Source: Macrostomum lignano (Eukaryota). From it: a stretch of 64,000 bases of DNA. How positions within the stretch are numbered: the stretch's first letter is position 1; the number at the start of each line of letters is the position of its first letter. The position numbers were made by a program, and so were the translations under genes. Positions 20,501 to 61,348 of the stretch are shown in pieces. Location of the stretch: positions 1 through 64,000 of the forward strand of contig NIVC01003448.1 of assembly GCA_002269645.1 (NCBI GenBank). The letters are read 5' to 3'. The notes beneath the pieces are model-generated. The model worked only from the letters and a program-made list of their open reading frames with translations. It was not told the origin of the DNA and searched no databases.

Positions 20501-23500
20501 GATACCCCAGTCTGACAGGAGATACTTCAGTCAAAAAAGAAAAGCTTTAATCCACCTAAGAAGCACCATAATCCACTAAAAAACACCATCATTCACTAGG
20601 AGACACCCTAATACAACAGAAGACACTCTAATCCACCAGAAGACACCCCAATTCACCAGAAGACACCCTAATCCACTAAAAGACACTCTAATCTACTAAA
20701 AGATACCCTAATCCACTAAAAGACACCCTAATCCACTAAAAGACACCCTAATCCACTAAAAGACACCCTAATCCACTAGAAGACGCCCTAATACAACAGA
20801 AGACACTCTAATCCACCAGAAGACACTCTAATCCACCAGAAGACACCCTAATCCACTAAAAGACACCCTAATCCACTAGAAGACGCCCTAATGCAACAGA
20901 AGACACTCTAATCCACCAGAAGACACTCTAATCCACCAGAAGACACCCTAATCCACTAAAAGACACCCTAATCCACTAGAAGACGCCCTAATGCAACAGA
21001 AGACACTCTAATCCACCAGAAGACACTCTAATCCACCAGAAGACACTCTAATCCACTAAAAGACACCCTAATCTATCAGAAGACACCCTAATCCACTAAT
21101 TTACACTCTAATCCACCAGAAGACACTCTTATCCACCATAAGACACTCTTATCCACCAGAAGACACCCCAACCCACCAGAAGACACCCTAATACACTAGA
21201 AGACACCTCAACCCACCAGAAGACACCCCCATTCACCAGAAGACACCCTAATCCACCAGAAGACACCCAAATCCACCAGAAGACACTCTAATCCACCAGA
21301 AGACACCCAAATCCACCAGAAGACACCCAAATCCACCAGAAGACACACTGATCCACTAAAAGACACCCCAACCCACCAGAAGACACCCTAATACACCAGA
21401 AGACACCTCAACCCACCAGAAGACACCTCAACCCACCAGAAGACACCCCAACCCACCAGAAGACACCCTAATACACCAGAAGACACCTCAACCCACCAGA
21501 AGACACCCTAATCCACCAGAAGACACCCAAATCCACCAGAAGACACCCCAAATCCACCGGAAGACACCTCAACTCACCAGAAGACACCCCAACCTACCAG
21601 AAGACACCTCAACTCACCAGAAGACACCTCAACTCACGACAGAAGACACCCCAACCCATCAGAAGACACCTCAACTCACCAGAAGACACCCCAACCTACC
21701 AGAAGACACCTCAACTCACCAGAAGACACCTCAACTCACGACAGAAGACACCCCAACCCACCAGACGACACCTCAACCCACCAGAAGACACCTCAACTCA
21801 CCAGAAGACACCCCAACTCACCAGAATACACCTCAACTCACCACAGAAGACACCCCAACCCACCAGAAGACACTCCAACCCACCAGAAGACACCCTAATA
21901 CACTAGAAGACACCCCAAATCCACCAGAAGACACCCCAACCCACCAGAAGACACCTCAACTCACCAGAAGACACCTCAACTCGCGACAGAAGACACCCCA
22001 ACCCACCAGAAGACACCTCAACCCACCATAAGACACCTCAACTCACCAGAAGACACCCCAACTCACCAGAATACACCTCAACTCACCACAGAAGACACCC
22101 CAACCCACCAGAAGACACCCCAACCCACCAGAAGACACCCTAATACACTAGAAGACACCCCAAATCCACCAGAAGACACCCCAATCCACCAGAAGACACC
22201 TCAACCCACCAGAAGGCACCCTAATACATTAGAAGAGAGCAACTCTATCAAAGGACATGCCAACCTACGCAAATCAGAAATTGAATTTGCTCTCACATCG
22301 TAACCATGGCAACCATTCAAAGCGACAACAACCGCTGGCGCGGTGCCCTTGAAAAATGTGACTCGCACAGCCGAAGAGTTGGCCTTTCCCAGCAGGTAAG
22401 TGCAAACCGCCGTCCCAACCCTTGAGTCGTTCAGCATACACACGCTGCCGACTTGGCCATTGTCAAGCTCGGCCAGCAGCAGTCCGCTCTGGGAGCCGCT
22501 GCCCAGACTGGCTCGCTCAATTGTGAGGCCTGAGTTGATTGACAAGTTGTGTTTCAGTAGATTCAGAATGCTGAGATTCTTATAAGGTGATAAAAATTCT
22601 AGAATGAGATTCTGGAAATAAGATTAGATCTAAATAATGAGTTTTGAAATTTGAAATTAGATTGAAAGAATGAGATTTTCAGGATGAGATTGGATCTAGG
22701 ATGAGATTCTCAAGATGGGATTAGATCTATAGGATTAGATTCTCAAGATGAGATTAGATCTAAAAAATAAGATTTTCAAGATGAGATTCGATCCATAGGA
22801 TGAGATTCTCTAGGTCTGTTGGATAAATGAGTCTCAAAATGAGATTAGATCTAAAGGATGAGATTCTCAAGATGAGATTAGATCCATAGGATGAGATTAG
22901 ATCCATAGGATGAGATTCGATCCATAGGATGAGATTCGATCCATAGGATGAGATTCGATCCATAGGATGAGATTCGATCCATAGGATGAGATTAGATCCA
23001 TAGGATGAGATTCGATCCATAGGATGAGATTCTCTAGTTCTGTTGGATAAAAGTCTCAAAATGAGATTAGATCTAAAGGATGAGATTATCAAGATGTGAT
23101 TAGATCCATAGGATGAGATTCTCAAGTTGGGATTACATCTAAAGGTTGCAATTCTCTAGATGAGATTAGATTTAATGAGTAAAATTCAAGATGAGAATAG
23201 ATCTATATGTATAATATTCTCACGATTGGATTATATTTAAAGAATAAGAGTTTCAAGATGAGAATATATCTATAAGGTGAGATTCTTTTGGTGAGATTAG
23301 ATTAAAAAGAATAGGATTTTCAAAACAACCTTAGATCTATTGGATTAGATTCTCAAGATGAGAGTAGATCAAAAGGATGAAACTATCAAGACTTCATTCA
23401 AGCTAAAGGAAGAGATTATCAAGATGAGATTAGATCCATAAACGAGGTTCAGAAAGCTGAGACTAACTTGGAAGGATGAGATTAGACGAGATCTGTTGGA

Positions 23501-29540: not shown

Positions 29541-31108
29541 ATGAAAACTAAAATCGAAGTTCTCACTTTTCTGCTGCTGCTGTTCGTCTACAGCCATCCA
29601 GCCGACTGTCTTGCCGTCACCTTCGTCAAGGCGTCCAATCTTTGCCTAAAGAATTCAACGCCAGTAGCAGTCGCGGCGGTCCCGCCCGCTGCAAACTCCA
29701 CTAACGCGACCTTTCGTCGAATCTCCGGCATTGCCGACGTTCGAGTGTGCGCTGTGGAGTGCGCCGCTGCGGGCTCGCTGCGGTGTTCGGTGTTCCAGCT
29801 AGTTCCAGGATCGGAGCAGGGTTCCAGCTCGCCCGGTGACTGTCTGCTCGGCTCCTCCTGCGACCTGGCTAATCAGTGGAGCTACAACAACAACTATTCT
29901 AACGGTGAATGCCTCACTCAAGTGCTCGACGATCGCCTGTCGTGTGACGCTCTGTTGGCCAGTCCGATGATCTATTCGGGTTCGTGAGATTCCTCTTATT
30001 TAGAATTTAAATTGTTACTCTCTAAATCTTAAAATAATAATTATTATTTGCCCGTAAAGCAACACGACATTGACGATGACCAATGTTTTTTTCGATTAGT
30101 ATCGGACGTCGCTAGCTAAATGGGGATATTTACACTACACCGACGTTTAGCCAACGTGTTTGGCATAATTTAAAAATACCCATTCGTCTATGTCGTTCAT
30201 ATAGACATCGGGTACATCGGAAACTGGTCGGAATGTTGCAAAGAATATATACTTAAACAAATTTGTTATTGAGAAATAGAGTATTTACATAATGTTATGC
30301 TTTCAATGCAGCCAACAATGCAGCCACCTCCACTGGTCGGTTCGGCAATCTGCAGCATTTCTCGCTGACAAGCTCGTCCGGCTGCTTCTTAATAACAGCT
30401 TGGGGCGCTAAGGGCGGATCAGCTGATGGCGGCGCCGGCGGTCGCGGCGCCATCATTAGCGCCAGATTTGCTCTACCAGCTGCTAACGGTTTAGTGACGC
30501 AACTAACTCTGGTTCTCGGCCAGGCCGGAACCAGCAACAACTGCGGCGGCGGTGGCGGCGGCGGCACATTTGTATATTTCCGTCGGAACAACACCGGCAA
30601 CGACGCAGCCGATTGGAAGCTGCTGCTGGTTGCTGGGGGCGGTGGCGGCGCCGGAGCTGGCAGTTCAGGCAACAGTGCCGGATTGTCGTTCTCGCGCAGC
30701 GGAGCCGGAACTGGAGGCGGGGCCTCTTCCATTCCGTCGTGCGGCGGTGGCGGCGCCGGTTGGAGCGGATCCGGCGCGGACTGCGACGCGTCGACAAAGC
30801 AGGGCTTCGGCGGCAGTTCCGGTCGCGCTAACGGATGGGCTGGCGGAGCTTCAAGCGCTACGGGAGTCGGTGGATTTGGCGGCGGCGGCGGCGCAGGAGA
30901 TGGGAACGGAAATTCTGGCGGTGGCGGAGGTGGCGGCGGCTTTGCTGGCGGTCGCGGAGGCAAAAGTTCCGGCGGATCTGGCAGCGCGGGTAGCAACTTC
31001 GCGGCCCTAGAAGCCAAAGGCGTTACTGTCAGTTCCAACGTGCAGACTAGCGGTGGAAGAGTAAAAATTGAACTGTTAGGGACCGCGAGCAGTGACTTGT
31101 GCGCCTGA
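29541..31108 (+). CDS. secreted PAN/apple + ALK/LTK-type glycine-rich domain protein, ~410 aa, no TM or kinase
   Basis: Exon 29541-29979 (signal peptide MKTKIEVLTFLLLLFVYSHPADC; PAN-like CAVECAAAGSLRCSVFQL...CLLG) joined in phase 1 to exon 30312-31108 (ITAWGAKGG...GGRGAIISARF..LVLGQAG..GGGGGGGTFV..LLVAGGGGG..GGFGGGGG..GGGGGFAGG..GSAGSNF..GRVKIE; TGA). Confidence 0.85.
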
Positions 31109-32443
31109 GCTTGGTATAATTTTGCTAGCTGAACATGAATGTGCATGCATGTTTCGGTTGATGAAATGCGTAACCGTACGGCAGTCTGCAAAAAAATCCG
31201 TCAAGGGACACTTATAATTACATGTCAATATTTTAAGTTTATATTCCTGTTTATCCTGGTACATATGTACGAGTGTGCGCATGTATTGAATTTTTTTATG
31301 AAAGTCCATAGGACTACATAGATTACCATGTTTACGTGGTACATGTATTTCCTAAATATTTTTTCCTAAAATTAATATCAACAAATAAAATAGTTATATC
31401 ATGATTTTTACTATCATGATTCGTAATAAAAATAAAAGCTTATAATGCATGAATTTACATATTTTTTTGTATCTTCACAGTAATTGTGAATGATTGGATA
31501 TCAAACTATTTAGAACAGAGTACGGGGAAAGGCCTATTAAAGAAATGTAAGTGTTACAAAAATTGCAGCAAAAGTCCACCCGGCCAACTTTGACCAACGC
31601 AGTTTTGCATCTGAGAAAAACAAATAATTGTGTATTAAAAAGGATCGTAGATTTTTTAAAACAAACTACAAAAGCTGCTTGACCGTTTAAATATAAAAAT
31701 ACTTTACATAGAACTTTCTGTAAAAGAAAGCCTCAATGAAATATTTGTTTTAATGCAAAGCAAAAACTGGTTTGAGCTACACACTTTCCGGTTCGGACGG
31801 ACTGCACTCTATTGACGACGACCGTCTAATCGTTAGTACAGCAAATGAAATTATGATTAGACTGACTAAAATGCCTGTTATGGTGTAGACTTTTGTATAG
31901 GCTAATGGCTCTGAGCATTAGATAGAGCAGTTGAAAGTAATAAATAGGCTAGAGCAGTAGCTAGAGTGGTAGTCGTAGATAGATCAATAGAACAGATAGG
32001 GCAATAAAAGTAGCGATAGTAGATACTAGATAGAGCTAGGCCCTGGCCTAGAGTATTTTCAGATTCTATCTACCATCCTTTGGCCTCAGATATCCTTTTC
32101 TACAATGGCACTATGTTTTAACTTTTAGCAAAAATTCAAACTTGAAAATAATAATGCAAAACAAACCAAAAGATTGCCTTAAATTTATTTAGCTATAGGC
32201 CTAGCATAGGGCCTAATTATAAAAAAAATATATTTGTGGCTGCTACAATAGGTCATGATCTATTTTATCTTTTAAATAAAATACAAAGAAAAATAAATTA
32301 TAATTTTGACATTTATCAAGCCCTGTTAGAATAAAAAAATAGACAAAAGTAAAAAATTGTCCAACTCAACTGTCTAATGCAACTTTAGAATTTTCTAGTG
32401 TCAAATTTATAGCTGAAGTCAAGGCAGATGGTCTTGCAACAAT

Positions 32444-32624
32444 GGCAGTGCTTATCCCCACGGTACCGTAGGAATAATTTCTGTCTTATTCCAACGGTAC
32501 CGTGCGAATAATTTTCTGCTTATCCGCACGGCACACTGAGGAGATAGCTGACCTATCTTCTACATATGCCGTGCGAATAATTTTCTGCTTATCCGCACGG
32601 CACACTGACGAGATAGCTGCCCTA
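32444..32624 (+). repeat. left TIR of Mutator-like element
   Basis: Reverse complement of 44384-44570 with few mismatches or indels. Confidence 0.9.
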
Positions 32625-34479
32625 TCTTCTACATATGCCGTGTGGGAAGTTTAGTATATACGACTAGCTAAAGTTTTGCCCCCCTTCGGGGAGCAGAAAT
32701 AATTAATATTCGTCTAATATAATATACCTTTTAGCAGGAGTACTTTAAGTGTCTTTCTTAAGCTTAAGCTTAAAATAGGAATTTTTGGAGATCGTTAATA
32801 ACGCATTTTAGGTAAAACAAAACTATCAACTTTTTACAGTTTTTTAGTTTAGAGCCCTGTATATGTCAACGTGTTTGATAAAAATTATTTTATTTATTTA
32901 GTTTATAAAACTGTTGAGATCACTTTTTTAGTTGTTACTGAAAATAAATTAAATAATATTCCAAGAAATTGCGACTTTCCGAGAAATGACTTGCTTTATT
33001 CCGATTTTCTTGTTGCTTGTATTGCTCATGTGTACTACAGTTTTATACACATCCCGATAAATTTTTTACTTTCTTCATTTGTAAGTGAATTTCTTAGCCC
33101 TGCTCATCGTACTAACTGCGACTGCAATGTTCCGAACAATAAGTAGCTCAGCATTGCAACTATTGCCCTTGAATGAGGCCCCTCTTATTATAATAAATGA
33201 CTTAAAGAGTCAGTTCAATGCAGCTATCTCATTGTGAATGGACTTTGCAAAAGCAACTGGAGCTACATCCTTCGACCTTTGGTTTGACACTTTTAATAAA
33301 GCTAACATTGGCTATATATAGGCATGATATATGATATATATTATCATGCTAAATTCCCCCTTTCTTTTCTAGTCACACTCCTCAGCAGACTTCTCTTTTC
33401 TTATATGCCTCATTCACATTGTCAAATCTTATTTTGAATCAAATCCTATATGACATAAAAGTCTATTTCAAATTAGATCCATTTTGATAGTTCAAAATGG
33501 TTAGCTCATATCAATGGCTAATTAAATATCAATGGATCAATTTCTAATCTCCTTTCTTTTTCTTAATGATTCCAGTTCTGATCAGATCCTATTTCTCATC
33601 TGACCTCTTTTCTTAGTAATCCATTTTGTATCATTCTTCATTATAAATGCATGCCTGACAATTTATCTTTTAAAATAGAATAAGGCAGGTACCAGGTGTG
33701 CAGATTCATGAATCATGGGACTGGTCTTTGTCCACTGAAACATTTTTTGTATTTCTTCAATTGCAAAACACATTGAAAACAACAAAACAACAACAATTGA
33801 GTGAGCATCTGGCAAAATTATTATTATACAAATACATATCATTATGACATTATAAGAAAACAAACTCCAAATGTAGAGAATTCAGCGATTTTCCTCTTTC
33901 GTTTGTTAAATTATTTTTTCGACAGAAACAAGTTGTGACTACTGAGTAATGTCAGAAAACGACAGTAATGGGACAGTAATGGGATTCAGTTCAATGAAAA
34001 AAGAAAAAATTGCATTGCACCTAAAAATATTACCCACAAACAGTAAACATGATGCACTTGCAGAAGGCTCCGCCAACAAGACAGTATCATTGCACAGTTC
34101 ATTGCATTTGACTGCAAGAATAATGGTGTCAATCCTACTGCTTGTTGGCTTGCTTTACTCTGCACTGCTGGTCAGAGGCATTCACTGGGGCAAGTTAAGT
34201 TCACGCACTCAACGTCACACAAAAAGCTTAGCTATCACAAGTCTCTAGGTTTGCTGAAGCTGCTTCAAACCTCTCTCTCATGGCTGCATACCCTCAGTTT
34301 TAGAGTGGAAGAACCTCTGAATCGTGAAAAAGCAGCGAACACGTTATTTCAACCACAATCTCAAGGCCCATTGATATGCAGCCAACCTGCTATATATTCA
34401 CCTAATATTTACCTACATTAATTTCACTATTACTTATTAACTTTCATGGCACAACTAAATTGGGATCCGATTGTATCCG

Positions 34480-34740
34480 ATCCTATTCTGGTTTGCCTTG
34501 ATCCCAATCTAGTTATGCAATGATCTCAATCTAGTTATGAAAGGATCTCAATTTTGTTATGCAATAATCCCATTTTAGTTACGCCAAATGATCCCAATTA
34601 CGCTAAGCAATGATCTTAGTTCTGTTATGCAATGAACCCAATTAGGCTAAGCAATGATCTCACTTCTGTTATGCCACAAACACAATTTAGCTAAGCAATG
34701 ATCTCACTTCTGTTATGCCACAAACACAATTTAGCTTACA
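34480..34740. repeat. degenerate minisatellite at the point where the helicase ORF stops
   Basis: atgcaatgatc-type units and a duplicated ttctgttatgccacaaacacaatttagct. Confidence 0.75.
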
Positions 34741-37700
34741 AAATCTGCAGACACACGCCATGACGCTGTTGGCGCGGGTTCCATTCACTACGACAGGCAG
34801 GAGCTGGCGGAAGTCACCGGAACACACCAGAGTGACTCCTCCAAATGGCTTGTCCTGCTTCCGAACGTCTCGCAGACACCTGTCCACGGATTCCAGATCC
34901 TTTCGATTGGTCATGGAGATCTCGTCCCAGACAATCAGCCGAACTCTACGAAACACTTCCGCTTGCTTGGACTGCGCGCCAACAGCGCAGACATCCTTGT
35001 TGGATCGGAGCAGCCGGACTGGGATCTTGAACCTAGAGTGAAGTTGTCATAGGTAGAATCGATTAGAAACGCGACTCTAAAATTCAGAAGCATTCCCCTA
35101 ATCTAAAAAACTTACGTGGAATGCGCAGTCTGTCCGCCTGGCAGCAGAGTCGCTGCGATTCCAGACGCCGCAACTGCCAGGGCGAGTTCACCGCGGCTGC
35201 GCACAAAGGCCAGCAAAACCTCCAGCAGGAAGGTCTTGCCAGTGCCAGCGGGCGCGTCCAGGAAGTGCAAACCGCCCGAGCCGGCCACAAGATCCGCAGT
35301 CACCGACTCGTACACCGCAATCTGCTCCTCCGTCAGCATTGACAGTCTCGCTTCCCGGATCTCGGCCTGTTCAACCGGGTCGAACTGCATCGGTCCGACT
35401 TGAAGCGGCACGGAGGCCGCAGGCAAGCCGTACTCGGGCAGGCTGTGACCGCCCATGGAGGTCAGCATGCTCTGCAGCTCGCGCAGCGCCAGGTCGGTGA
35501 TTTCCTCAGCGCTCAGATCTCGGTGGTGAAACCGCAGGTCCTCGCACAGATCCTCGGCGAATGTGCACCACAGATCGCTGCCATCCTCAGGGTTGCCCCA
35601 AATCAGAATGACAGCCAGCAGGTGCCTGAGAGCTCTCGGCATTCGCGACTGGACTGCCTCGGCTAGGCAGCGCCGCCAGTGGTCGTCTCGTTGCAGCAGA
35701 CCCAGGGCCGTGCAAGCAGCCTTGGCGCTGGGACACAGCACTCCGTCCACAGTGTGCAGCGCCTCGAAGCTGGTTGGCCCTCTAACCTGCAGGAGGAGCA
35801 TTCGCATATAAAACAGATCCCCTGCTCTCGGACTCACCGTGTACATTCGGGCAATGTTCGTGTTGTGCACAACACCAGGGTGGCCCTCAACTCTCGAACC
35901 CTTCTTGGCGCGGCGCCACTCCCTCTCGCTGTGGTGCCACACGAAGTAGGACGGCACCTCGGTGTACACCAGGCCTCTAGCGAATTCATCAGTGCGGCAC
36001 AGCTTGAAGAAAGCCGTCAGCGTCGAATCTCTGGGCGCCCTGGCCTTTGTGCTCGCATTTTGCTCGTTGAAATACACGAGCTGCTCGTTAGACTTGTGCA
36101 CGCACAATCGGATCACAGCCGGAAATCTGTTGTGCACCTGTTGTGTTTTAGTTTAAAAACCATATCATTATTTTCCCATTCTTTGCTCCTAGCACTGCCT
36201 TGCAAACATCTATGACTTACTTCAAAGCCCAAGATGGTATTCACGGCTTCCATTGGGCCTATGTAGCGCGCCAGCAGATACTCCTTGATCTCATTTCGCC
36301 CCTCCTTCTTGGCTTGAGTCGGAGCCTTGCTAGCTGAACCTTCCTGTCGTTCGCCATCCGCAGCCTGCTCTCCTGGCCCGCTCGGCTTCTTGTTTGCCTC
36401 GAACTTGAACGACGCCATGTCGCCGCCTTTTAGCAAGTACTTGATCACGTACTTGACCGACTTGACGGTGGCACAAACTTCAAAGTTCATGTGGCATTCG
36501 AAAAGGAGCAGCAGGCCCGGGTTGTATGGTACAACCGACCTGTATTTGTGCCAGGAAAAGAATTGCTAATTAATGATTTATGTATTCTAGCAATGGTAAA
36601 TTAAACTTACAGTAAATAAACAATTTAGCAATATAAATAAACTAAACACAAGGCTAAACTAAGTACTTTGCTTTCGTATTAAAGAATCAACCTTTCAATC
36701 AAGTCTGAAAAAACACCAACACCTCCTCACTCACCTGTTGTCCATGCGAATGCTGCGGCCTTTGAATAGTTTGTCCACCGTAAATCCGCCCATCTCAGGG
36801 GACAGCCTGCGATACAATGGGTAGCCAGTATCGCTGGTTAGGGTCGCCTGCTGGAACTCCTTCGGGAAGCCCTTGCTGCACTGGCCGTCCACCATGCACG
36901 GGCAGGCTGGATTTACCACGCCGCAGGGGCCATGGATCATGTGAGTCTTCACCAGCTCGTGCAGCCTCGGCTGCTGCTGTGGGTCCGGGATCTCAGCGGA
37001 CACGATTTTGTCGTAGCGGTCCGGAGTCACTCTCTGTCCACTGACCAGCCAGAGCAGAAAGTGCACATGGGGGAGACCTGTGGAAGACATAAACAAGTGA
37101 TTCAAAGCGACGTATGAGTGATCACAATTTAGTCATGTAAATTAATTAAAATTCTAAACCAGCGTTTGCATCGTAGAGAAAGCGGAGTTTGAATCATGGA
37201 GAAACTGGAGTTTGAATCATGGCTAAACCAGAGCTTAATTCCGGTTTGCAATGACCCCTTGCATAAAAATATGGATTGCTAAACCTGGAATGCAATTACA
37301 GAATGAAAATTGAAAGCGCAATTTGCTAACTTACCGCGCTTCTGATATTCCAGAGAGCAAACATGCGCGGCCTCCTTTCCAAAGCGCTTCCTCAGCTCGG
37401 CAAGCAGAGCCTTCTTCTTCAGCTCGAAAACACGCGTGACAATATCCGGCCGGTCCTCAGGTCGCTGTCCAGGCAGCAGCTGTGCACTGATTTCCGGCCA
37501 CTTAGGGTTGCACGTCGCCGTGACAAACAGGTCCGGCTTGCCAAACTTTTGTACATAGGTCATGGCGTCTTGCAGCCTCTCCATCAGGTACCTTGGCCCG
37601 CCAACGAAGCTGGAGGACAGGAACACGTGCGCAGGCTTGCCAATATCAGTCGGATTTGTGTCGGTCGACCTGCCATCAGCAGCGAATAGAGCGTCTCGCA

Positions 37701-39231
37701 GACCGCTGTACGTCTCACTGCGCAGATCGCTCTGATGGGTCCGCAGATAGAGCAGCCTCTCTGACTCAATCTTGGCGCACATGTCCACCAGGTACTGCTG
37801 GAACAGCCGCCGTCCGTGGTGCAGCAGGCTGCTATGGCCCGCTCGCACCATGATTTCGCTGGCATAGTACTTCATCGGCGTCAGCTTGCGGCCATTGCTC
37901 ATGCGCAGCTCCGGGTGCCAGCCGTCCTCGCCATGGGGGAACAGCAACACGTACTCCAGTGCATCATACGATCGGTGCGTTTTGCTAATCCTCTTGTAGC
38001 CGCCACCCCGCAGTTGAATGACAACATCTCGGCTAGTTGCTGGCTCATCACCGTCTTCAGGGGCCTCAGTGTCCTCAGTGTCCTTAACAATGAGGATGCC
38101 GACCTCGTTTGCCGTGGGCAAATTGTAGCGCCTGATTTTGAACGGTAGTCAACTCAGGGATGCTGAGGGAACTCAGCATCTGTAAAGGCTTGCAAAAGCT
38201 CTCGAAGTCTCAGTGACTCGTAATGTTCATGGCGCAAAAGCACACGCACAATGGCATTAGGAGGGCGCAAATTAGCCCTGAAATATTGCATCACACTACC
38301 ATTGGCCTGGTAAATGACCAGATCCACATCAAAGCAGCGGCTCAACAAAGAGGCAACTTCATCTGAAACATAAATTCCTGCTTGAAAAGAGGAATTCACG
38401 ATCTCATCAGCAATCTCAGGTGCAATGAGGCCATCTGCAATCAGCTGTGGCATGAGTTCTGCAACACGGCAAGACAAGTCCTGCCGCAGGGAGGCTGCGT
38501 CAGTTTCCAGCGGGGTTCCACGCAGCTGATCACACACAGCATAAAAAAAGCAATTGCCATCACCAACAATGGGGATTACCTGCAACTGCTCAAAGGGTAC
38601 TATAGTTTCTGTACCTTGCTGCTGGGTGTCCGACCTAAGGGGCAATGGGTGAACGTAAGCACAGCAGCCTTAATTGGCTTTTTAAGACAATTCATTCCTC
38701 AAAAATCGTTATCCGCTTAATTTATACAGAATAAAATAGATACTACAAATTATCCCCTTCAAGGCAATTCAGAAAAAAACAAAAATAAAGACTTGTTATA
38801 AAAAGTTACTATACAACTCACCTAGAAACCACAGCTCCACGGCAACGAATCCGATCGGCTTCCAGTCGGGCAGCCCACTCTGCCTCAGTCTCAGCCTCTC
38901 TGCGCTGAGCGTCCCGCTGCCGCTGTTCTTCCAGTCGGGCAGCCCACTCTGCCTCAGTCTCAGCATCTCTGCGCTGAGCATTCCGCTGCCGCTGTTCTTC
39001 CAGTCGGGCAGCTCGCTCTGCCTCAGTCTCAGCATGTCTGCGCTGAGCATCCCGCTGCCGCTGTTCTTCCAGTCGGGCATCCCGCTCTGCCTCAGTCTCA
39101 GCATGTCTGCGCTGAGCATCCCGCTGCCGCTGTTCTTCCAGTCGGGCATCCCGCTCTGCCTCGGATTCTGCCTGTCGCCGTCGCTTGGCATCGCGGCTCT
39201 TCTTTAAACTGCTGGCGCCGCGTCGAACCAT
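34740..39231 (-). pseudogene. Helitron RepHel gene: charged-repeat N-terminus, OTU protease, HUH Rep, Pif1 helicase (C-terminally truncated)
   Basis: Exons 39231-38822, 38634-~38154 (OTU), 38131-37335, 37077-36735, 36539-36221, 36137-35116, 35032-34740. The junctions from 38131 downstream are phase-compatible. Rep motifs PDLFVTATCNPKW, EYQKRG|LPHVHFLLW, KSVKYVIKYLLKG. Pif1 motifs DAPAGTGKT, VAASGIAATLLPGGQTAHST|FKIP, LIVWDEISM, PFGGVTLVCSGDFRQLLPV. Helicase motifs IV-VI not found; no clean OTU-to-Rep splice found. Confidence 0.9.
38154..38634 (-). other. OTU-family cysteine protease (deubiquitinase-like) domain exon within RepHel
   Basis: IPIVGDGNCFFYAVCDQL (catalytic D-G-N-C) ... VLLRHEHYESL (catalytic His). 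Confidence 0.85.
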
Positions 39232-39714
39232 GATTGAGAAATGAGAAGTGAAATGAAATTAGTTCAGAAAGAATGATATGGTTTGAAAGATGAAAGTTTG
39301 TGAATTTGGATGTCTGAAGAATCAGATAAGGTGCCCTTGAGCCAAACTATTACAGGCTATTTATCATCCAGTGGGCTGAATTGGAGCTTATCTTAAGACG
39401 CAGGGTAGAAACTGAAAAATCGATAAAGAAGAAAGGGGTCTAAATCTAAAAACCTATGATTTGGGGTGTGGGCTCTCCAGGCCCGTGTGTCCAAATTCCG
39501 GGGCAGAGGGCTCACAATGTACACTGGTCTGCGCCAGCCAGTGAAAAAAACTGTGAATGTAATCTATTTATGACTGTCTCGCCAGTGGGGTTGATACAGC
39601 TATGTACTTTTGACATAGTGAAATTCTTATCAGAGTTACCAGTATCACTGATATCAGTGATATCATCAATATCAGTGATAATCAGTATCACTTTTAACAA
39701 AACTGGTTTTGCAA

Positions 39715-40040
39715 TGATTCAAACTCTGGTTTAGCCATGATTCAAACTCTGGTTTAGCCATGAGTCAGACTCTCGTTTAGCCATGATTCAAACTCTGGTT
39801 TTGCCATGATTCAAACTTTGGTTTAGCCATGATTCAAACTCTGGTTTAGTCATGATTCAAACGATGGTTTAGCCATGACTTAAACTCTGGTTTAGCCATG
39901 ATTCAAACAATGGTTTAGCCATGATTCAAACACTGGTTTTAGCCATGATTCAGACTCTGGTTTAGCCATGATTCAGACTCTGGTTTAGCCATGATTTAAA
40001 CTCTGGTTTAGTCTGATTCAAGCTCTATTTTTGCAATGAT
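39715..40040. repeat. 23-bp minisatellite (tcaaactctggtttagccatgat) in the Helitron B leader
   Basis: About 14 units; the same unit occurs inverted at ~37180-37235. Confidence 0.9.
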
Positions 40041-40125
40041 TCAAAGTCAGATAATATTTTATTTACGAAGTGAATGAAAAAAATAAATTTAAATAATCTT
40101 CAATCACTACTGGCTGAAATTTGAC

Positions 40126-40220
40126 GCAGTGCAGAATCGAACCCTAGCCGAGCCTATAACCAATTCCTAGTGCCTACACATCGGCTATCGGCTAGTCTGT
40201 TCGCATCTTTCTTGGCTATC
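40126..40220 (-). other. tRNA-like/Pol III B-box segment in Helitron B subterminal region
   Basis: Minus strand ...ggctagGGTTCGATTCtgcactgc; positionally homologous to 43495-43559. Confidence 0.45.
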
Positions 40221-40837
40221 TCTTTTCAATTGGAGAACATGAATTGTGGCCCTTATAATTCAATTCTTACAGCAAGTCAATTGGAGTAAAAAATTATGAC
40301 ATAATCAATTTCTCAGTCAGCCAGAATCAGTCTCAATTTAAGTTGGCAATATGGTTACGCAATTTCATTCAAGTTTTGTGTGCATTTGTTCGGCACTGTT
40401 TTCAACTTGTTGTGATGCAATCTTTATCACAATCGGAATTCAGTCAGTCAGTTTTTTCTCTAGCATTCTTACAATGCATTTCAGGTCGAAAGAGCTGCTT
40501 GACCTTTGCAAAAAATCATGTTTTTCGAATATTTAATCCCTTTAACATTGAGCAATTTCTTAGCCAATATGCATGTACCGTCCCGGGAAAATTTCTGATC
40601 GAATGGTGCAAGTTTGAAGAAAATCGGTTGAGCCGTTCGGGAGAAAATCAATTACAAGCAAGCAACCAAGCATTTCATTTTTAGTATATAGGACTAGCAA
40701 TCTTCGCCCCCCGATGGGGGGCATCTAGATAGAATCTCTGGCACTCTACAAGTATCAAAAAGACGGCCAAATAAAGCCTTCACATAGACAATAGAAAAAC
40801 TGCTCAAATGAAGTGCAATGCAAAAAAATATCCCAGG

Positions 40838-41735
40838 ACAGCAAGCAACCCCCCAGATAGCAAGCACCCCCAGATAGCAAGCATCCACCTAATAGCAAGC
40901 ACCCTTAGATAGCAAGCATCCCCAGATAGCAAGCACCCTTGGATAGCAAGGCAAGCATCTCCAGATAGCAAGCACCCCCAGATAGCAGGCACCCCAGATA
41001 GCAAGCATCCACCTAATAGCAAGCACCCCAAGATAGCAAGCATCCACCTAATAGCAAGCACCCTTAGATAGCAAGCACCCCCAGATAGCAAGCACCCCCA
41101 GATAGCAAGCACCCCAAGTAGCAAGCATCTCTAGATAGCAAGCACCCCCAGATAGCAGGCACCCCAGATAGCAAGCATCTCCAGATAGCAAGCACCCCCA
41201 GATAGCAAGCATCCACCTAATAGCAAGCACCCCCAGATAGCAAGCATCCACCTAATAGCAAGCACCCCCAGATAGCAAGCACCCCAGATAGCAAGCACCC
41301 CCAGATAGCAAGCATCTCTAGATAGCAAGCACCCCCAGATAGCAGGCACCCCAGATAGCAAGCATCCACCTAATAGCAAGCACCCCCAGATAGCAAGCAT
41401 CCACCTAATAGCAAGCACCCCCAGATAGCAAGCACCCCCAGATAGCAAGAACCCCCAGATAGCAGGCACCCCAGATAGCAAGCATCCACCTAATAGCAAG
41501 CACCCCCAGATAGCAAGCACCCCCAGATAGCAAGCACCCCCAGATAGCAAGCACCCCCAGATAGCACGCATCTCCAGATAGCAAGCACTCCAAGATAGCA
41601 GGCACCCCAGATAGCAAGCATCCACCTAATAGCAAGCACCCCAGATAGCTAGAACCCCCAAGATAGCAAGCATCCCCCAGATAGCAAGCACCCCCAGATA
41701 GCACGCATCTCCAGATAGCAAGCACTCCAAGATAG
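40838..41735. repeat. 17-18-bp minisatellite (gatagcaagcaccccca)
   Basis: Inside Helitron A; a few similar units also occur at ~48955-48995. Confidence 0.95.
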
Positions 41736-41749
41736 TAGGCACCCCATTT

Positions 41750-43440
41750 ATGTTTGACATGGTAGCTGTTTTGTGTCTGACATGGTGGCTCTTTAATGTT
41801 TGAGCTGGTGGCTCTTTTATGTTTGACATGGTGGCACTTTAATGTCTGAAATGGAGTCATGTATACGCTTGACATGGTGACTCGTAGATGTTTGACAAAG
41901 TGGCTCTTTTATGTTCGACATGTGGCTCTTTAATGTTTGACATGGTGGCTCTTTAATGTTTGACATGGTGGCTCTTTAATGTTTGACATGGTGGGTCTTT
42001 AATTTATGACATGGTGGCTCTTTTATGTTTGACATGATGGCTCTTTAATGTTCGACATGGTGGCTGTTTAATGTTTGTTATGTAGTCATATGTATATGTT
42101 TTACATGGTGGCTCTTTTATGTGTGACATGGAGTCACGTATATATTTGACATGGAGTCACATATGTTTGACATGGTGGCTCTTTAGTGTTCGATATGGTG
42201 GCTCTTTAATGTTTGACATGGTGGCTCTTTTATGTTTGACATAGTGGCTCTTTAATGTCTGACATGGTGGCTCTTTAATGTTTGACATGGTGGCTCTTTT
42301 ATGTTTGACATGATGGCTCTTTAATGTTCGACATGGTGGGCTGTTTAATGTTTGTTATGTAGTCATATGTATATGTTTTACATGGTGGCCCTTTTATGTG
42401 TGACATGGAGGCACGTATATATTCGACATGGAGTCACATATGTTTGACATGGTGGCTCTTTAGTGTTCGATATGGTGGCTCTTTAATGTTTGACATGGTG
42501 GCTCTTTAATGTCTGACATGGTGGCTCTTTAATGTTTGACATGGTGGCTCTTTTATGTTCGACATGTTGGCTCTTTAGTGTTTGACATGGCTCTTTAATG
42601 TTTGACATGGTGGCTCTTTTATGCTTGACATGGTGGCTCTTTAATGTTCGACATGGTGGCTCTTTAATGTTTGACATGGTGGCTCTTTTATGCTTGACAT
42701 GGTGGCTCTTTTATGTTCGACATGGTGGCTCTTTTTGTTCTACATGGTAACTCTTTTATGTTTGATACGGTGGCTTTTTAATATCTGACATTGTGGCTCT
42801 TCTATGTTTGACATTGTGGCTCTTTTATGTTTGACATGGTGGCTCTTTAATGTTTGACATGGTGGCTCTTTAATGTACGACATAAAGGTTCGTTTATGTT
42901 CGACATGGTGGCTCTTTTAGGTTTGACATGGTAGCTCTTTTATGTTCGACATGGTGGCTCTTTTAGGTTTGACATGGTGGCTCTTTTAGGTTTGACATGG
43001 TAGCTCTTTTATGTTCGACATGGTGGCTCTTAAATGTTTCACATGATGGCTCTTAAATGTCTTACATGGTGGCTCTTTTATGTTTGACAATGTGGCTCTT
43101 TAATGTTTTACATGGCGGCTCTTTTATGTTCGAAATGGTGGCTCTTTAATGTTCGACATGGTGGCTCTTTAATGTTTGACATGCTAGCTCTTTAATGTTC
43201 GACATAGTGGCTCTTTTATGTTTGGCATGGTGGCTCTTTAATGTTCTTCATGGTGGCTCTTTTACGTTTGACATGGTGGCACTTTAATGTTCGACGTGGT
43301 GGCTCTTTAATGTTTGAAATGGTGACTCTTTAATGTTTCACATGGTGGCTCTTTAATGTTTGACATAGAGTCACGTATTTGTTTTACATGGTGCCCATGT
43401 AATGTTTGACATGGTGCCTCTTTTATGTTTGACATTGTGC
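41750..43440. repeat. 23/24-bp minisatellite (gacatggtggctctttaatgttt)
   Basis: Inside Helitron A, about 70 units. Confidence 0.95.
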
Positions 43441-43494
43441 TTTTTTATGTTTAGCAGTTTCGTGTTTTCAAGGTGTTTTATAAAAAAATTATTT

Positions 43495-43559
43495 TGCACT
43501 ACTAAGATTCGAACCCAGGTCGCTACGTTGGCAGTCCAGTCTGTTCGTATCTAGGCTAT
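43495..43559 (-). other. tRNA-Gly(GCC)-like degenerate segment in Helitron A
   Basis: Minus strand TAGCCTAG...gactggaCTGCCAAcgtagcgacctGGGTTCGAATCttagtagtgca: A-box-like start, GCC loop, B box. Confidence 0.5.
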
Positions 43560-44383
43560 CTCTTTTCAATTGGAGTACATGAATTGTGGCCCTTATAATT
43601 AAATTCTTACAGCAAGTCAATTGGGGTAAAAAGTTATGACATAATCAATTTCTCAGTCAGCCAGTATCAGTCTCAGTTCAAGTTAGCAATATTGGTTACG
43701 CAATTTTAATCAAGTCGTGTGTGCATTTCTTCGGCACTGTTTTCAACTTGTTGTGATGCAATCTTTATGACAATCAGAATTCAGCCAGTCAGTTTTTTTC
43801 TCTAGCATTCTTACAATGAATTTTAGGTCGAAAGAGCTGCTTGACCTTTGCAAAAAAGCATGTTTTTCGAATATTTAATCCCTTTATCATTGAGCAATTT
43901 TTTAGCCAAGATGCATGTACCGTCCCAGGAAAATTTCTGATCGAATGGTGCAAGTTTGAAGAAAATCGGTTGAGCCATTTTTTCTGAAATCTATCGCATA
44001 CCTACCCACATACAGACAACTCATTTTTAGTATATAGGATGATGAAGTTTTTAAGAAAATGTGCTTTTTCATTGATTTCCATAAACTATTTTTGCTTCGT
44101 TCTTATTGGGCGCCCCGATTTGAGTGCAGTATAACAACTTTGTTGAATTATTGTTGAATAAGTATACAGAAGGGTACCAGTAAAGTAGAATAACACGCAT
44201 TTACACATGCATATACTAGTCTAGAACTGATTTGAGTTTATACATCAAGATCAACAGCTTCTTAGTATCCTCAGTTCAAATTCCCTTTTAATAAGCTATA
44301 AACTATTCACGCACAGCATATATATGTAGCAGATAGGGCAGCTAGTAAAGCAGAGGGGGAAATGGAATAAAACAGAGGACGTG

Positions 44384-44570
44384 TAGGGTAGCTATCTCGT
44401 CAGTGTGCCGTGCGGATAAGCAGAAAATTATTCGCACGGCATATGTAGAAGATAGGGCAGCTATCTCCTCAGTGTGCCGTGCGGATAAGCAGAAAATTAT
44501 TCGCTGATTCGCACGGTACCATTGGAATAAGACAAATTATTCCTACGGTACCGTGGGGATAAGCACTGCC
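44384..44570 (-). repeat. right TIR of Mutator-like element
   Basis: Reverse complement of 32444-32624. Confidence 0.9.
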
Positions 44571-44618
44571 TGCAACAATATAGAACAGTTTTGGGTAAAT
44601 GTCAGGGATATCTATGAC

Positions 44619-45584
44619 GGCATTCCTTCAGTTTACAATCATTGAAATTAGTGACAATCCCCATTGGAGAGATAGGGAAGATACAAAATTGTTGTTTATT
44701 TCATCAAAATGCAAAAAAACAGTGTAGACAAGCACTCCAATCATTTTATTTATCCATCATAACATTAGTTGCATGTTCAAATGAAAAAAGAAGGTAAAGG
44801 GGTTATAGTGATCCATTTCACAGTTCCAAGAATCTAAAGATAACCTATATATCCACTTCGGTTTACGATCATTTAAATGGAAGAGATACATGTAAATGAT
44901 CGTGAACCGAAGCTAGCGTATGTGTGTAAAGGGGTTTTGGTGTTTTACAAGCTCTATCTGAAATCGATCACTATCTCAATACATGGCTAGCTTTGGTTCA
45001 CGATCATTGACATGTATTGCTTACATCTAAATGATTGTAAACCGAAGCTGAGGGGGGGTGGCAGCATGCAGAGAATAATAAAACATCAAGTTACTTGGGA
45101 GCGCACATTAACTCAAGATGACATTTCAATTGCCAACAAGCTACCAATTATTAAATGACTACATATGTCTTTGACACCCCCTCTTAGCTTTGGTACACGA
45201 TCATTTAAATAGAAGAAATACATGTAAATGATCGTGAACCAAAGCTAGCCATGTATTGAGATAGTGATCAATTTCAGATAGAGCTTGTAAAACACCAAAA
45301 CCCCCTTACACACATATGCTAGCTTCGGTTCACGATCATTTACATGTATTGCTTCCATTTAAATGATCGTAAACTGAAGTGGATATATAGGATCCTCGTC
45401 ATTGCCATGCCATGAAAGAAACCATTTGTTGGCTATTCTGTTCAGTTTTTTTAATGTAATGAATATGCTCAGTTTAACAATTTTTGTTTATTTCAAGCAA
45501 GCTATGATCATTTATATGAAAAATTACATGGGGATTGTGAACCGAAATGTGGGTGGAAAAATGATTGTAAACTGAAGGAATGCC
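44619..45584. mobile_element. 966-bp non-autonomous foldback DNA element (MITE)
   Basis: Perfect 25-bp TIR GGCATTCCTTCAGTTTACAATCATT (44619-44643 / 45560-45584); flanks TCTATGAC / ACTATGAC (7 of 8 match); internal long inverted arms ~44844-45062 and ~45173-45391. Confidence 0.8.
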
Positions 45585-48383: not shown

Positions 48384-49194
48384 TAGATTCCAGATTACCA
48401 AATGCAATTTTGATGCTTTAAAAACCTTGATTGAAAGGTTTATATATGTTAAAGTTTTTTTGTTTATCTACTAACTTTATATTCTATTTATCTTGCTTTT
48501 TATGTAGGAAATTCTCTAGAATATTGCCATAGACCAGAATAACAATGGTTAAATATTGTATTTATTTATAAAAAATTGTGTATGCACCTTATTACATTAT
48601 AAAAAACAATGTCAAGCAACTAGTGCTAGGCATTATTGCCCATTTTGCTAAGTCCCCTAGGCAGATATATGTAAGAGTGTACAGTGGTCTTGAATTTTCA
48701 ATTGTCCAGCATATTCACATTGTGCCATGGCAACTTGGCCTTTAAAGGTATTAATTTCAAAAGGAGACTCAATCTAAGATTTTGTTAAGAAACAATTCCT
48801 TTTTCAGTTTTATAAATCGCCTTATTTGAGTAAAATTGTCTTGGACAAAGATGGTTACTAAGAACCTATCTTTTAAAAATAAGGACCCAACAAAATAAAG
48901 CCATTGAAAAGTTAAAAGACATTCCCCTAGGGCCCTAAATTGAAATAATCCCCCCAATAGCAAGCACCCCAGATAGCAAGCATCCCCCCCAGATACCACA
49001 TAAGAACTGAAATGTAAAACGCTGATAATACAGTCAACTATACAATGATCACCTTATAATAATTTATAGAGATTTAGTATATTTGGATTTAGTGTGAGTA
49101 AATTAGGGATTAATATTCTAAGAAGTGACAATCAAAATAAATATTTAACTTGCTCCATTCCTGCAGTTGCAACCCAATTAACACAATTGAAAAT

Positions 49195-55615
<6,421 letters not shown>

Positions 55616-61100: not shown

Positions 61101-61315
61101 AGTAGGGGATCTGTCAGTAGGGGATCTGTCAGTCAGTAGGGGATCTGTCAGTAGGGGATCTGTCAGTCAGTAGGGGATCTGTCAGTAGGGGATCTGTCAG
61201 TAGGGGATCTGTCAGTCAGTAGGGGATCTGTCAGTCAGTAGGGGATCTGTCAGTCAGTAGGGGATCTGTCAGTCAGTAGGGGATCTGTCAGTAGGGGATC
61301 TGTCAGTCAGTAGGG
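58155..61315. repeat. 3.2-kb satellite of 15/19-bp units (gtaggggatctgtca[gtca])
   Basis: About 180 units with GGGG tracts. Confidence 0.97.
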
Positions 61316-61348
61316 TAATGTCAGAAGAGGGGATCTGCCAGTAGAGCA

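What the first reader, a model, noticed from the sequence alone, without database searches (positions are those of the whole stretch)
32435..44579. Composite transposon: Mutator-like shell carrying a tandem Helitron pair
Seen: ~185-bp TIRs and a perfect 9-bp TSD enclose 11.4 kb of Helitron inserted ~40 bp inside the left TIR. Removing 32664-44039 leaves a ~750-bp MULE-like MITE. With TIRs and TSD intact, a trans-acting MuDR-type transposase could move the whole Rep/OTU/helicase cargo by cut-and-paste, coupling rolling-circle and DDE systems. Whether the composite actually moved as a unit is unknown.
Basis: partly seen in the sequence, partly recalled or inferred. Interest (0 to 1): 0.8.

Follow-up and report, generated by a model that had tools for sequence, protein, structure and literature searches.

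The report
Helitron array nested in TIR transposon
A small cut-and-paste transposon in the flatworm Macrostomum lignano has been invaded by two rolling-circle Helitrons lying head to tail; this is an ordinary nested insertion, and nothing shows that the whole package has ever moved as one unit.

Summary
181/187-nt terminal inverted repeats (3 mismatches, 2 indels) and a perfect 9-bp duplication (TGCAACAAT) enclose 11,376 bp of Helitron, which starts 39 bp inside the left repeat. Removing it leaves a 751-bp non-coding element.

The insert lies on the minus strand. It consists of a minisatellite-carrying non-autonomous Helitron (44039→40694) joined CTAG|TC to a Rep/helicase Helitron, "HelA" (40693→32664).

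The genome is Macrostomum lignano. Nine other HelA-type copies were fetched; the seven full-length ones are 99–100% identical to the window copy. None lies inside this TIR element, and its repeats occur nowhere else in about 325 kb examined. The window HelA lacks about 0.9 kb and about 2 kb that the seven full-length copies keep, including the C-terminal half of the helicase. It is therefore defective cargo.

Head-to-tail Helitron arrays are the rule here: 30 of 31 Helitron 3' ends abut another Helitron 5' end. In the window the array ends at a 14-bp Helitron-5'-end-like motif that looks native to the TIR element.

"Mutator-like" is unproven. The Merlin superfamily (5'-GG termini, 8–9-bp duplication) fits equally well.

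Verdict: a secondary nested insertion, a known kind of structure. Mobilisation as a composite is untested genome-wide and unsupported. Interest is low to moderate.

The parts
32435..32443 (.). Left copy of the 9-bp target-site duplication, TGCAACAAT
   Evidence: Read directly. Identical to 44571-44579.
32444..32624 (+). Left terminal inverted repeat (181 nt). It starts GGCAGTGC and is built from 34-bp (x2) and 69-bp (x2.1) sub-repeats, each holding a short palindrome (ACGGTACCGT; CCGTGCG...CGCACGG).
   Evidence: Alignment A1; I1 and I18; TRF rows 32449-32525 and 32500-32642; pattern counts.
32625..32649 (+). Inner, degenerate continuation of the left arm (TCTTCTACATATGCCGTGTGGGAAG). It is still homologous to the right arm across a 42-bp insertion in the right arm.
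   Evidence: Local alignment, score 26 against shuffles of 13.8 +/- 2.3; 1 of 2000 shuffles reached it.
32650..32663 (-). 14-bp Helitron-5'-end (LTS)-like motif TCGTATATACTAAA, directly after the last Helitron 3' end. It is either native TIR-element sequence that mimics an LTS (favoured) or the stub of a third Helitron unit.
   Evidence: The 11-mer TATATACTAAA occurs 3 times in the window against 0.03 expected. The motif is identical to the 5' ends at L001 22109 and L004 13440. The right arm has a mirrored counterpart, TAGTTTATA.
32664..40693 (-). Helitron unit 2, 'HelA' (8,030 bp). 5' end TCCTATATACTAAAAATGAAATG. 3' hairpin at 32678-32694 (GCTCCCCGAAGGGGGGC), then 10 nt, then CTAG at 32664-32667. 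It encodes a fragmented OTU-like/Rep/PIF1 protein and carries two deletions relative to the full-length sister copies, at 38153/38167 (about 0.9 kb) and 34616/34743 (1.7-2.5 kb, which includes the C-terminal half of the helicase).
   Evidence: Pfam Helitron_like_N E = 3.8e-46 and PIF1 E = 1e-18 and 2e-23. 96% identical to M. lignano P0001. blastn against L001 and L005-L010. The segment missing here encodes the PIF1 C-terminal part, Pif1_2B and UvrD_C_2 in L001. Hairpin fold.
40694..44039 (-). Helitron unit 1 (3,346 bp), non-autonomous. It has a 5' region of about 590 bp that is 92-96% identical to the HelA 5' region, then a 23-bp minisatellite (41747-43452, 74 copies), a 17-bp minisatellite (40840-41745, 53 copies), a 3' hairpin at 40706-40722 (GCCCCCCATCGGGGGGC) and CTAG at 40694-40697.
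   Evidence: (D7, D8, D10). It is 91-93% identical to unit-1-type copies in L005-L008 and L010.
44040..44116 (+). 77 bp next to the array's 5' end. It is homologous to the 3' sub-terminal tail of another Helitron unit in L007 (71 bp at 100%) and ends in the left half of that unit's hairpin. Its orientation is opposite to the array. Its origin is unexplained.
   Evidence: blastn hits at L007 7461-7531 and 25096-25166; sequences read.
44117..44383 (.). Remaining non-coding interior of the TIR element. It includes a 42-bp insertion and a partial third sub-repeat of the right arm.
   Evidence: No ORF or similarity found; arm alignments.
44384..44570 (-). Right terminal inverted repeat (187 nt)
   Evidence: Alignment A1; I1 and I18.
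44571..44579 (.). Right copy of the 9-bp target-site duplication, TGCAACAAT
   Evidence: Read directly.

Best explanation
A 751-bp non-autonomous cut-and-paste (TIR) transposon of Macrostomum lignano inserted at TGCAACAAT and was afterwards invaded by Helitrons. The insert is a short head-to-tail Helitron array on the minus strand. It holds an older minisatellite-bearing non-autonomous unit and a very young, internally deleted copy of the Rep/helicase Helitron HelA.

In this genome Helitrons almost always land immediately 5' of the 5' end (LTS) of another Helitron. Here the landing pad was a 14-bp LTS-like motif, TCGTATATACTAAA, just inside the left TIR, which is probably native to the TIR element. 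RepHel supplied in trans nicks at the 5' edge of an LTS and joins the incoming element there, so the array grew at that point.

What is shown: the anatomy, the identity of the families, the lack of any other copy of the composite in the sample, and the array rule.

What is inferred: the order of events, LTS-directed integration, and that the composite has never moved as a unit.
For: - TIRs and TSD are intact and specific.
- Canonical Helitron ends are present: 5' TC preceded by A, a hairpin 8-10 nt upstream of 3' CTAG, and a precise CTAG|TC junction. Pfam finds Helitron_like_N and PIF1.
- The host is M. lignano.
- Nine other HelA-type copies (L001, L005-L010, L012) all lie outside any such TIR element. 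The seven full-length ones are 99.1-100% identical in non-satellite blocks, and each has a different 5' context.
- The window copy alone lacks both the ~0.9-kb and the ~2-kb segments that the seven full-length copies keep.
- Unit 1 is only 91-93% identical to its relatives, whereas HelA is about 99.9% identical to its relatives. This argues against the dimer being copied from any dimer seen in the sample. It suggests, but does not prove, that HelA arrived later.
- 30 of 31 Helitron 3' ends in 304.7 kb are followed by an LTS motif. All 9 HelA-type 3' ends are, with at least 7 different neighbours. Their 5' neighbours are sometimes plain host DNA.
- The inverted homology of the two arms continues through GGGAAGTTTAGTATATA on the left against GTGAA---TAGTTTATA on the right. 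This places the LTS-like motif inside native TIR-element sequence.
- Nested insertions in TIR elements and tandem Helitron arrays are both documented (PMC3903597; PMC5876387; PMC5148889).
Against: - No second copy of the TIR element, empty or filled, could be found. The pre-insertion sequence is therefore unknown and the 'native LTS mimic' rests on a weak arm-to-arm alignment.
- The 77 bp on the other side of the insertion point (44040-44116) is Helitron-related and starts exactly at the array boundary. A simple insertion model does not predict this.
- Only about 325 kb of a genome of several hundred Mb (size from my own knowledge) was examined, and it was biased toward Helitron loci. Absence of other composites is weak evidence.
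- The closer relatives of unit 1 may simply not have been sampled.
Confidence: 0.7

Rival explanations
1. First reader's reading. The TIR element plus its Helitron cargo is a functional composite that a trans-acting DDE transposase has moved, or moves, by cut-and-paste. On this view the Helitrons were already inside when the element inserted at TGCAACAAT.
For: The TIRs are about 98% matched and the TSD is perfect. MULE-type elements of 10 kb or more exist (abstract of PMC13359780). Nothing in the window fixes the order of events.
Against: None of the nine other HelA-type copies is inside the TIR element, and neither the TIRs nor the junctions recur in about 325 kb. HelA is about 99.9% identical to its sisters, so a composite move would have had to happen in a very narrow recent window. 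No transposase source was identified. Nested insertions are associated with degeneration of the coding MULEs they hit (PMC3903597).
Confidence: 0.06
2. Single-event array transposition. A donor array was copied by rolling-circle transposition starting at the 5' end of unit 1. It read through two 3' ends and terminated 14 nt into a third unit, so the 14-mer came in with the Helitrons.
For: The 14-mer is identical to real Helitron 5' ends elsewhere and is 13/14 identical to unit 1's own 5' end. Bypass of the 3' end is the accepted route to Helitron transduction, and tandem or truncated multi-copy insertions are reported (PMC5148889; PMC5876387). The [unit-1-type][HelA] order recurs at L006, L008 and L010.
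Against: The closest HelA copies are joined to unit-1 copies that are only 91-93% identical to the window's unit 1, so no donor dimer is seen. Termination at ...CTAAA|C would give a non-canonical 3' end and a non-T flank. The arm-to-arm alignment places the motif within TIR-element sequence.
Confidence: 0.12
3. Capture rather than insertion. During gap repair after an excision attempt of the TIR element, synthesis switched template into a Helitron array elsewhere and copied 32650-44116 as filler DNA (Pack-MULE-like acquisition). This would explain why both boundaries fall inside Helitron features.
For: One boundary lies 14 nt into an LTS. The other lies in the middle of the hairpin of an inverted Helitron tail. 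A single event would explain both odd boundaries.
Against: 11.5 kb is very large for filler DNA (my own knowledge of Pack-MULE and Ds derivatives). The 5' end of unit 1 sits at a clean A|TC junction. The LTS-adjacent position is exactly what independent HelA insertions show everywhere else. No donor locus with this arrangement was seen.
Confidence: 0.12

Closest known systems
Nested transposon insertions in TIR elements (for example nested insertions in maize and rice MULEs, PMC3903597)
   Same: A TIR/TSD-bounded DNA transposon is interrupted by a later insertion of another transposon. The TIRs and TSD are left intact.
   Different: Here the invader is a Helitron array rather than an LTR retrotransposon. 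The host element is a 751-bp non-coding element of unresolved superfamily in a flatworm.
Tandem, head-to-tail Helitron arrays (bat Helibat, Drosophila, maize, rice; Fusarium FoHeli4 inserted 2 bp upstream of a partial 5' end of another FoHeli4; PMC5876387, PMC5148889)
   Same: There are precise RTS-to-LTS (CTAG|TC) junctions. One case has a Helitron followed by only a partial 5' terminus.
   Different: The M. lignano arrays are heterogeneous: different families and 3'-end types are adjacent. They are also near-universal, at 30 of 31 3' ends in the sample. This points to integration next to resident 5' ends rather than concatemer replication of one element.
Canonical Helitron1-type elements such as Helibat/Helraiser
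   Same: 5' TC with a TA-rich LTS, a GC-rich hairpin about 10 nt before 3' CTAG, and a RepHel protein with HUH Rep and Pif1-type helicase domains. I recall the Helraiser LTS beginning TCCTATATAATAAAAG, but this is from memory and was not verified.
   Different: The N-terminal region is OTU-like (below the Pfam threshold here). Internal minisatellites are present. The window copy is deleted and non-autonomous.
Merlin superfamily non-autonomous elements
   Same: Termini start 5'-GG, the TIR is within 24-462 bp, the TSD is 8-9 bp, and the superfamily is present in flatworms (PMC8101967). The neighbouring element at 44619-45584 also starts GGCA and has an 8-bp TSD.
   Different: No IS1595-type DDE transposase or autonomous partner with these termini was found. 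Membership is untested.
Mutator-like elements (MULE / Rehavkus) and Pack-MULEs
   Same: 9-bp TSD and long TIRs with internal sub-repeats. The TSD range is 8-11 bp and the TIR range 14-500 bp. Flatworm MULEs have 9-bp TSDs (PMC6446971). These elements are able to carry foreign DNA.
   Different: No MURA-type transposase is linked to these TIRs. The cargo has transposon-precise features (A|TC, CTAG|TC) rather than those of a captured gene fragment.

Membership tests
Helitron (canonical, Helitron1 type) | 5' terminus TC, 3' terminus CTRR | tested here: met
   Both units start TCCTATATAC and end CTAG.
Helitron (canonical, Helitron1 type) | GC-rich hairpin about 10-15 nt upstream of the 3' end | tested here: met
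   7-8-bp stems at 32678-32694 and 40706-40722, lying 10 and 8 nt before CTAG. They fold at -6.6 and -9.4 kcal/mol, with z = -1.8 and -2.0.
Helitron (canonical, Helitron1 type) | Insertion between host A and T without a target-site duplication | tested here: inconclusive
   The 5' flank is A. The 3' flank is T only if the 14-mer TCGTATATACTAAA is host (TIR-element) sequence. The 11-bp repeat TATATACTAAA on both sides is the Helitron 5' motif, not a TSD, because it recurs at every array junction in other loci.
Helitron (canonical, Helitron1 type) | RepHel protein (HUH Rep plus Pif1-like helicase) | tested here: met
   Helitron_like_N E = 3.8e-46 and PIF1. 96% identical to M. lignano RepHel P0001. 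However, the window copy lacks the N-terminal region of about 0.9 kb and the C-terminal half of the helicase, so it is not autonomous.
MITE / non-autonomous TIR element | Short, non-coding, with TIRs and a TSD | tested here: met
   751 bp after removal of the insert. There is no ORF with any database match. TIRs and TSD are confirmed.
MITE / non-autonomous TIR element | Multiple dispersed copies with different TSDs | tested here: inconclusive
   No other copy was found in the rest of the window or in about 273 kb of M. lignano loci. None was found among predicted proteins via TIR ORFs or in JGI metagenomes. The whole genome could not be searched.
Mutator-like element (MULE) | TSD of 8-11 bp (typically 9) and long TIRs | tested here: met
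   9-bp TSD and 181/187-nt TIRs. Criteria are from PMC6446971.
Mutator-like element (MULE) | Mobilised by a MURA-type (MULE DDE) transposase from an autonomous element sharing the termini | not testable with these tools
   No such transposase lies in the window. Of the ORFs of at least 130 aa, the ten longest outside the composite and the composite's own ORFs were scanned against Pfam; the rest were not. The genome cannot be searched by DNA.
Merlin superfamily | Termini 5'-GG, TIR 24-462 bp, TSD 8-9 bp | tested here: met
   GGCAGTGC..., 181/187 nt, 9 bp. Criteria are from PMC8101967.
Merlin superfamily | IS1595/IS1016-type DDE transposase in an autonomous partner | not testable with these tools
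   No partner was found and no way was available to search the genome for the termini.
Composite transposon mobilised as a unit | At least two loci with identical internal junctions but different TSDs | tested here: not met
   There were 0 further junctions in about 325 kb, and all nine other HelA-type copies lie outside the TIR element. The sample is small, so this lowers the claim but does not exclude it.

The most novel reading that the evidence does not exclude
Macrostomum lignano Helitrons integrate by LTS-directed strand transfer. RepHel nicks at the 5' edge of any resident, or mimicked, Helitron 5' end and joins the incoming element there, which builds heterogeneous head-to-tail arrays. 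The TIR element carries a native 14-bp LTS mimic that acted as such a landing pad. A cut-and-paste element with such a pad could in principle ferry a growing Helitron array.
Probability: 0.35. Interest if true: 0.5.

Novelty: new member of a known kind. Interest (0 to 1): 0.25.

Why it matters
As flagged, it matters little. Transposons nested in other transposons are routine in repeat-rich genomes, and intact TIRs do not make a composite mobile.

Two by-products have modest value.

1. The near-universal, heterogeneous head-to-tail arrangement of M. lignano Helitrons is a clean natural data set. Young, about 99.9%-identical HelA copies are always placed immediately 5' of another Helitron 5' end. 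This bears on how Helitron arrays form: target choice at an LTS versus concatemer replication.

2. The window gives a rare view of an array's 3' boundary, reduced to a 14-bp LTS-like motif inside unrelated DNA. This suggests how little sequence may suffice as a landing site.

Both points are directly testable with the public genome and with purified RepHel.

Tried and rejected
- **Other copies of the TIR element.** I searched the window with the terminal 25-mer and the 32-mer sub-repeat, allowing up to 3 mismatches. I ran blastn with word sizes 9-11 against 12 M. lignano loci. I searched translations of all open frames of the 751-bp element against the 5.8-billion-protein collection, hoping for spurious gene calls on other copies (no hit). 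I ran one exact-pattern scan of JGI metagenome contigs (no hit). All were negative.
- **A homeologous or allelic empty site through neighbouring genes.** The pyruvate-kinase gene 4.6 kb to the right led only to a 75-83% paralogue whose contig starts 575 bp before the gene. The single-exon ORF 29541-29987 is not on record.
- **An 11-bp TSD from a non-Helitron element.** I considered that the direct repeat TTTAGTATATA flanking the insert was such a TSD. I rejected this because the same motif sits at every Helitron junction in other loci.
- **Shifted unit boundaries (motif as part of the 3' end, ending CTAA).** I rejected this because the motif also precedes 5' ends that abut host DNA (L001, L008, L012) and because it matches the canonical TC/TA-rich LTS.
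- **The [unit 1][HelA] dimer copied as a block from a dimer like L008's.** I rejected this for the sampled loci because unit 1 differs by 7-9% while HelA differs by about 0.1%.
- **Pfam on other large window ORFs.** No transposase was found.


Full report
**1. Observation**

The left flank reads ...TGCAACAAT|GGCAGTGCTTATCCCC... and the right flank reads ...GGGGATAAGCACTGCC|TGCAACAAT.... This is a perfect 9-bp direct duplication abutting inverted termini.
- MAFFT alignment of 32444-32700 with the reverse complement of 44300-44570 gives arms of 181 and 187 nt, with 3 mismatches and indels of 2 and 8 bp. The repeat finder reports a 121-nt segment at 98% and the terminal 37 nt at 100%.
- The terminal 25-mer is found only at these two places in 64 kb, with 0 expected.
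- The arms are built from 34-bp and 69-bp sub-repeats, each with a short palindrome. These are plausible transposase-binding sites (inference).
- Removing 32664-44039 leaves 751 bp with no meaningful ORF.

**2. What the insert is**

All coding similarity lies on the minus strand: Pfam Helitron_like_N (E = 3.8e-46) and two PIF1 pieces. Read on the minus strand, the structure is as follows.
- The insert starts A|TCCTATATACTAAAAATGAG at 44039.
- At 40694/40693 there is a precise head-to-tail junction...GCCCCCCATCGGGGGGCGAAGATTGCTAG|TCCTATATACTAAAAATGAAATG.
- It ends ...GCTCCCCGAAGGGGGGCAAAACTTTAGCTAG at 32664.
- Both 3' ends have a 7-8-bp GC hairpin 8-10 nt before CTAG.

These are canonical Helitron termini.
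- Unit 1 (44039->40694, 3,346 bp) has no gene. It consists of a 5' region 92-96% identical to that of unit 2 (D7, D8, D10), two minisatellites (23 bp x74 and 17 bp x53) and a 3' end.
- Unit 2, here called HelA (40693->32664, 8,030 bp), carries the OTU-like/Rep/helicase gene.

**3. Organism and sister copies**

A protein search places the gene in Macrostomum lignano. The best hit is P0001, 96% identical; other flatworm copies are 52-89% identical. Through cluster members I fetched loci L001, L005-L010 and L012 from assembly GCA_002269645.1.
- L001 and L005-L010 hold full-length HelA copies. Their non-satellite blocks are 99.1-100% identical to the window copy. L012 holds a separate HelA deletion derivative that is 94-99.9% identical in the blocks it retains.
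- All seven full-length copies retain about 0.9 kb (L001 11064-11959) and 1.7-2.5 kb (L001 15369-17835) that are absent from the window copy, at 38153/38167 and 34616/34743.
- The first missing segment encodes the cysteine-rich N-terminal part of RepHel (P0001 sequence).
- The second missing segment encodes the rest of PIF1, the Pif1 2B domain and UvrD_C_2.
- The cargo is therefore a defective deletion derivative.
- The OTU assignment is weak by Pfam (E = 0.13), although UniRef names the homologue an OTU-domain protein.

**4. Test of the composite idea**

None of the nine other HelA-type copies is inside this TIR element. blastn of the 751-bp shell and of 1 kb of each flank against about 273 kb of fetched M. 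lignano DNA and the rest of the window found no TIR and no junction.
- Indirect routes to more copies failed, as did routes to a homeologous empty site.
- The result is what a simple secondary insertion predicts. It covers only a small, Helitron-biased fraction of the genome, so it lowers the composite reading without excluding it.

**5. Arrays are the rule**

Across 304.7 kb I found 31 recognisable Helitron 3' ends of two types: a G(C/T)xCCCC...GGGGGGC hairpin followed by CTAG, and a CTCCTCC...GGAGGAG hairpin followed by TTCCACTCG.
- 29 are followed directly by the 5' motif TC(N)TATATACTAAA. One more is followed by it after a short microsatellite.
- The young HelA family is informative. All 9 of its 3' ends are followed by an LTS, belonging to at least 7 different neighbour types. 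Several of its 5' ends abut ordinary DNA after an A (L001, L005, L012).
- The base 5' of the insertion point is often G (...CTAG|) rather than the canonical A.
- Heterogeneous neighbours cannot come from concatemer replication of one element. The simplest reading is integration at the 5' edge of a resident LTS (inference).
- Tandem Helitron arrays are already reported, including a Helitron placed just upstream of a partial 5' end of another (PMC5876387; PMC5148889).

**6. The 3' boundary in the window**

After the last CTAG come 14 bp, TCGTATATACTAAA (32663->32650), then TIR-element sequence.
- The 14-mer is identical to true 5' ends at L001 22109 and L004 13440. The 11-mer core is 100-fold over-represented in the window.
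- It could be a stub that arrived with the array, or native sequence that mimics an LTS.
- A local alignment shows the inverted homology of the two arms continuing, past a 42-bp insertion in the right arm, through GGGAAGTTTAGTATATA (left) against GTGAA---TAGTTTATA (right, reverse complement). The score is 26 against 13.8 +/- 2.3 for shuffles.
- This favours a native mimic, but only weakly, because most of the score comes from the known sub-repeat.

**7. An unexplained piece**

The 77 bp next to the array's 5' end (44040-44116, plus strand) match the 3' tail of another non-autonomous Helitron in L007. 71 bp are 100% identical, and the match ends in the left half of that unit's family-typical hairpin. 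The orientation is opposite to the array, and the homology begins exactly at the array boundary.
- Either the TIR element's interior already contained Helitron scraps, or the L007 unit captured TIR-element sequence, or the whole segment 32650-44116 was copied in by template switching during gap repair.
- I cannot decide between these without another copy of the element.

**8. Superfamily of the shell**

- MULEs have 8-11-bp TSDs and TIRs of 14-500 bp. Flatworm MULEs have 9-bp TSDs (PMC6446971).
- Merlin elements have conserved 5'-GG termini, TIRs of 24-462 bp and 8-9-bp TSDs (PMC8101967), and that paper cites a Merlin element from the flatworm Schmidtea mediterranea.
- The element here (GGCAGTGC..., 181/187 nt, 9 bp) meets both sets of structural criteria.
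- A second small TIR element lies 40 bp to the right (44619-45584). It has 25-bp perfect TIRs starting GGCATTCC and an 8-bp TSD, TCTATGAC/ACTATGAC. It shares the GGCA start, which is mild support for Merlin-type elements in this region.
- No transposase was available to settle this.

**9. Mechanism and verdict**

Most likely (about 0.7), an empty non-autonomous TIR element sat at this site. Helitron unit 1 and later the deleted HelA copy were integrated by RepHel acting in trans, at the LTS-like motif just inside the left TIR. This is the position Helitrons take throughout this genome.

Rivals:
- mobilisation of the composite as a unit (about 0.06);
- one-step read-through transposition of an array fragment (about 0.12);
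- capture by gap repair (about 0.12).

The structure is real and neatly preserved, but it is a known kind of thing: a nested insertion combined with a tandem Helitron array. Interest is therefore low. The array-formation rule and the 14-bp landing motif are the only parts a specialist might want to follow up.

Noticed in passing
window 44619-45584: A second small TIR element (966 bp) lies 40 bp to the right of the composite. It has 25-bp perfect TIRs (GGCATTCCTTCAGTTTACAATCATT), an 8-bp near-perfect TSD (TCTATGAC / ACTATGAC) and an internal pair of 220-nt inverted repeats (92%). Its termini share the GGCA start with the element under study.
   Followed up: partly
window 49150-55543 (+): A pyruvate kinase gene. 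Exons lie at about 49222-49462, 50402-50634, 51601-52043, 53997-54488 and 55371-55543. Its introns are packed with 20-25-bp minisatellites. L011 holds a paralogue 75-83% identical in the exons.
   Followed up: partly
window 3053-5281 and 5274-8300 (+): Two very long adjacent ORFs (742 and 1008 aa, overlapping by 8 nt in different frames) have no Pfam match. The second is non-repetitive and rich in N-x-S/T motifs. It could be a large secreted or surface protein, or an unclassified mobile-element protein.
   Followed up: partly
whole window (e.g. 1436-1959, 8852-9457, 11503-12209, 16271-19200, 20548-22236, 52108-53602, 58156-61342): There is an exceptional density of unrelated minisatellite arrays with periods of 14-48 bp, some over 3 kb long. 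Several may be cores of non-autonomous Helitrons like unit 1, but no Helitron ends were found next to most of them.
   Followed up: no
L001-L010, L012 (M. lignano loci): 30 of 31 Helitron 3' ends are joined to another Helitron's 5' end. Two distinct 3'-end types (hairpin + CTAG; CTCCTCC..GGAGGAG + TTCCACTCG) are intermixed in the same arrays. The first 3-5 nt of the 5' end vary (TCC / TCTAA / TCG / none), even among HelA copies that are 99-100% identical.
   Followed up: partly
L010 17694-19102 and L012 13523-14931: An RPA-like gene (REPA_OB_2, tRNA_anti-codon OB folds; 338 aa) lies inside HelA-type Helitrons, as in many plant and animal Helitrons. It is absent from the window copy.
   Followed up: no
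window 37156-37233 vs 39703-40045: 3.4 copies of the 23-bp minisatellite that forms the HelA 5' array lie, in inverted orientation, inside the Rep domain region between EYQKRG and LPHVH. The annotated homologue P0001 treats this region as an intron.
   Followed up: no
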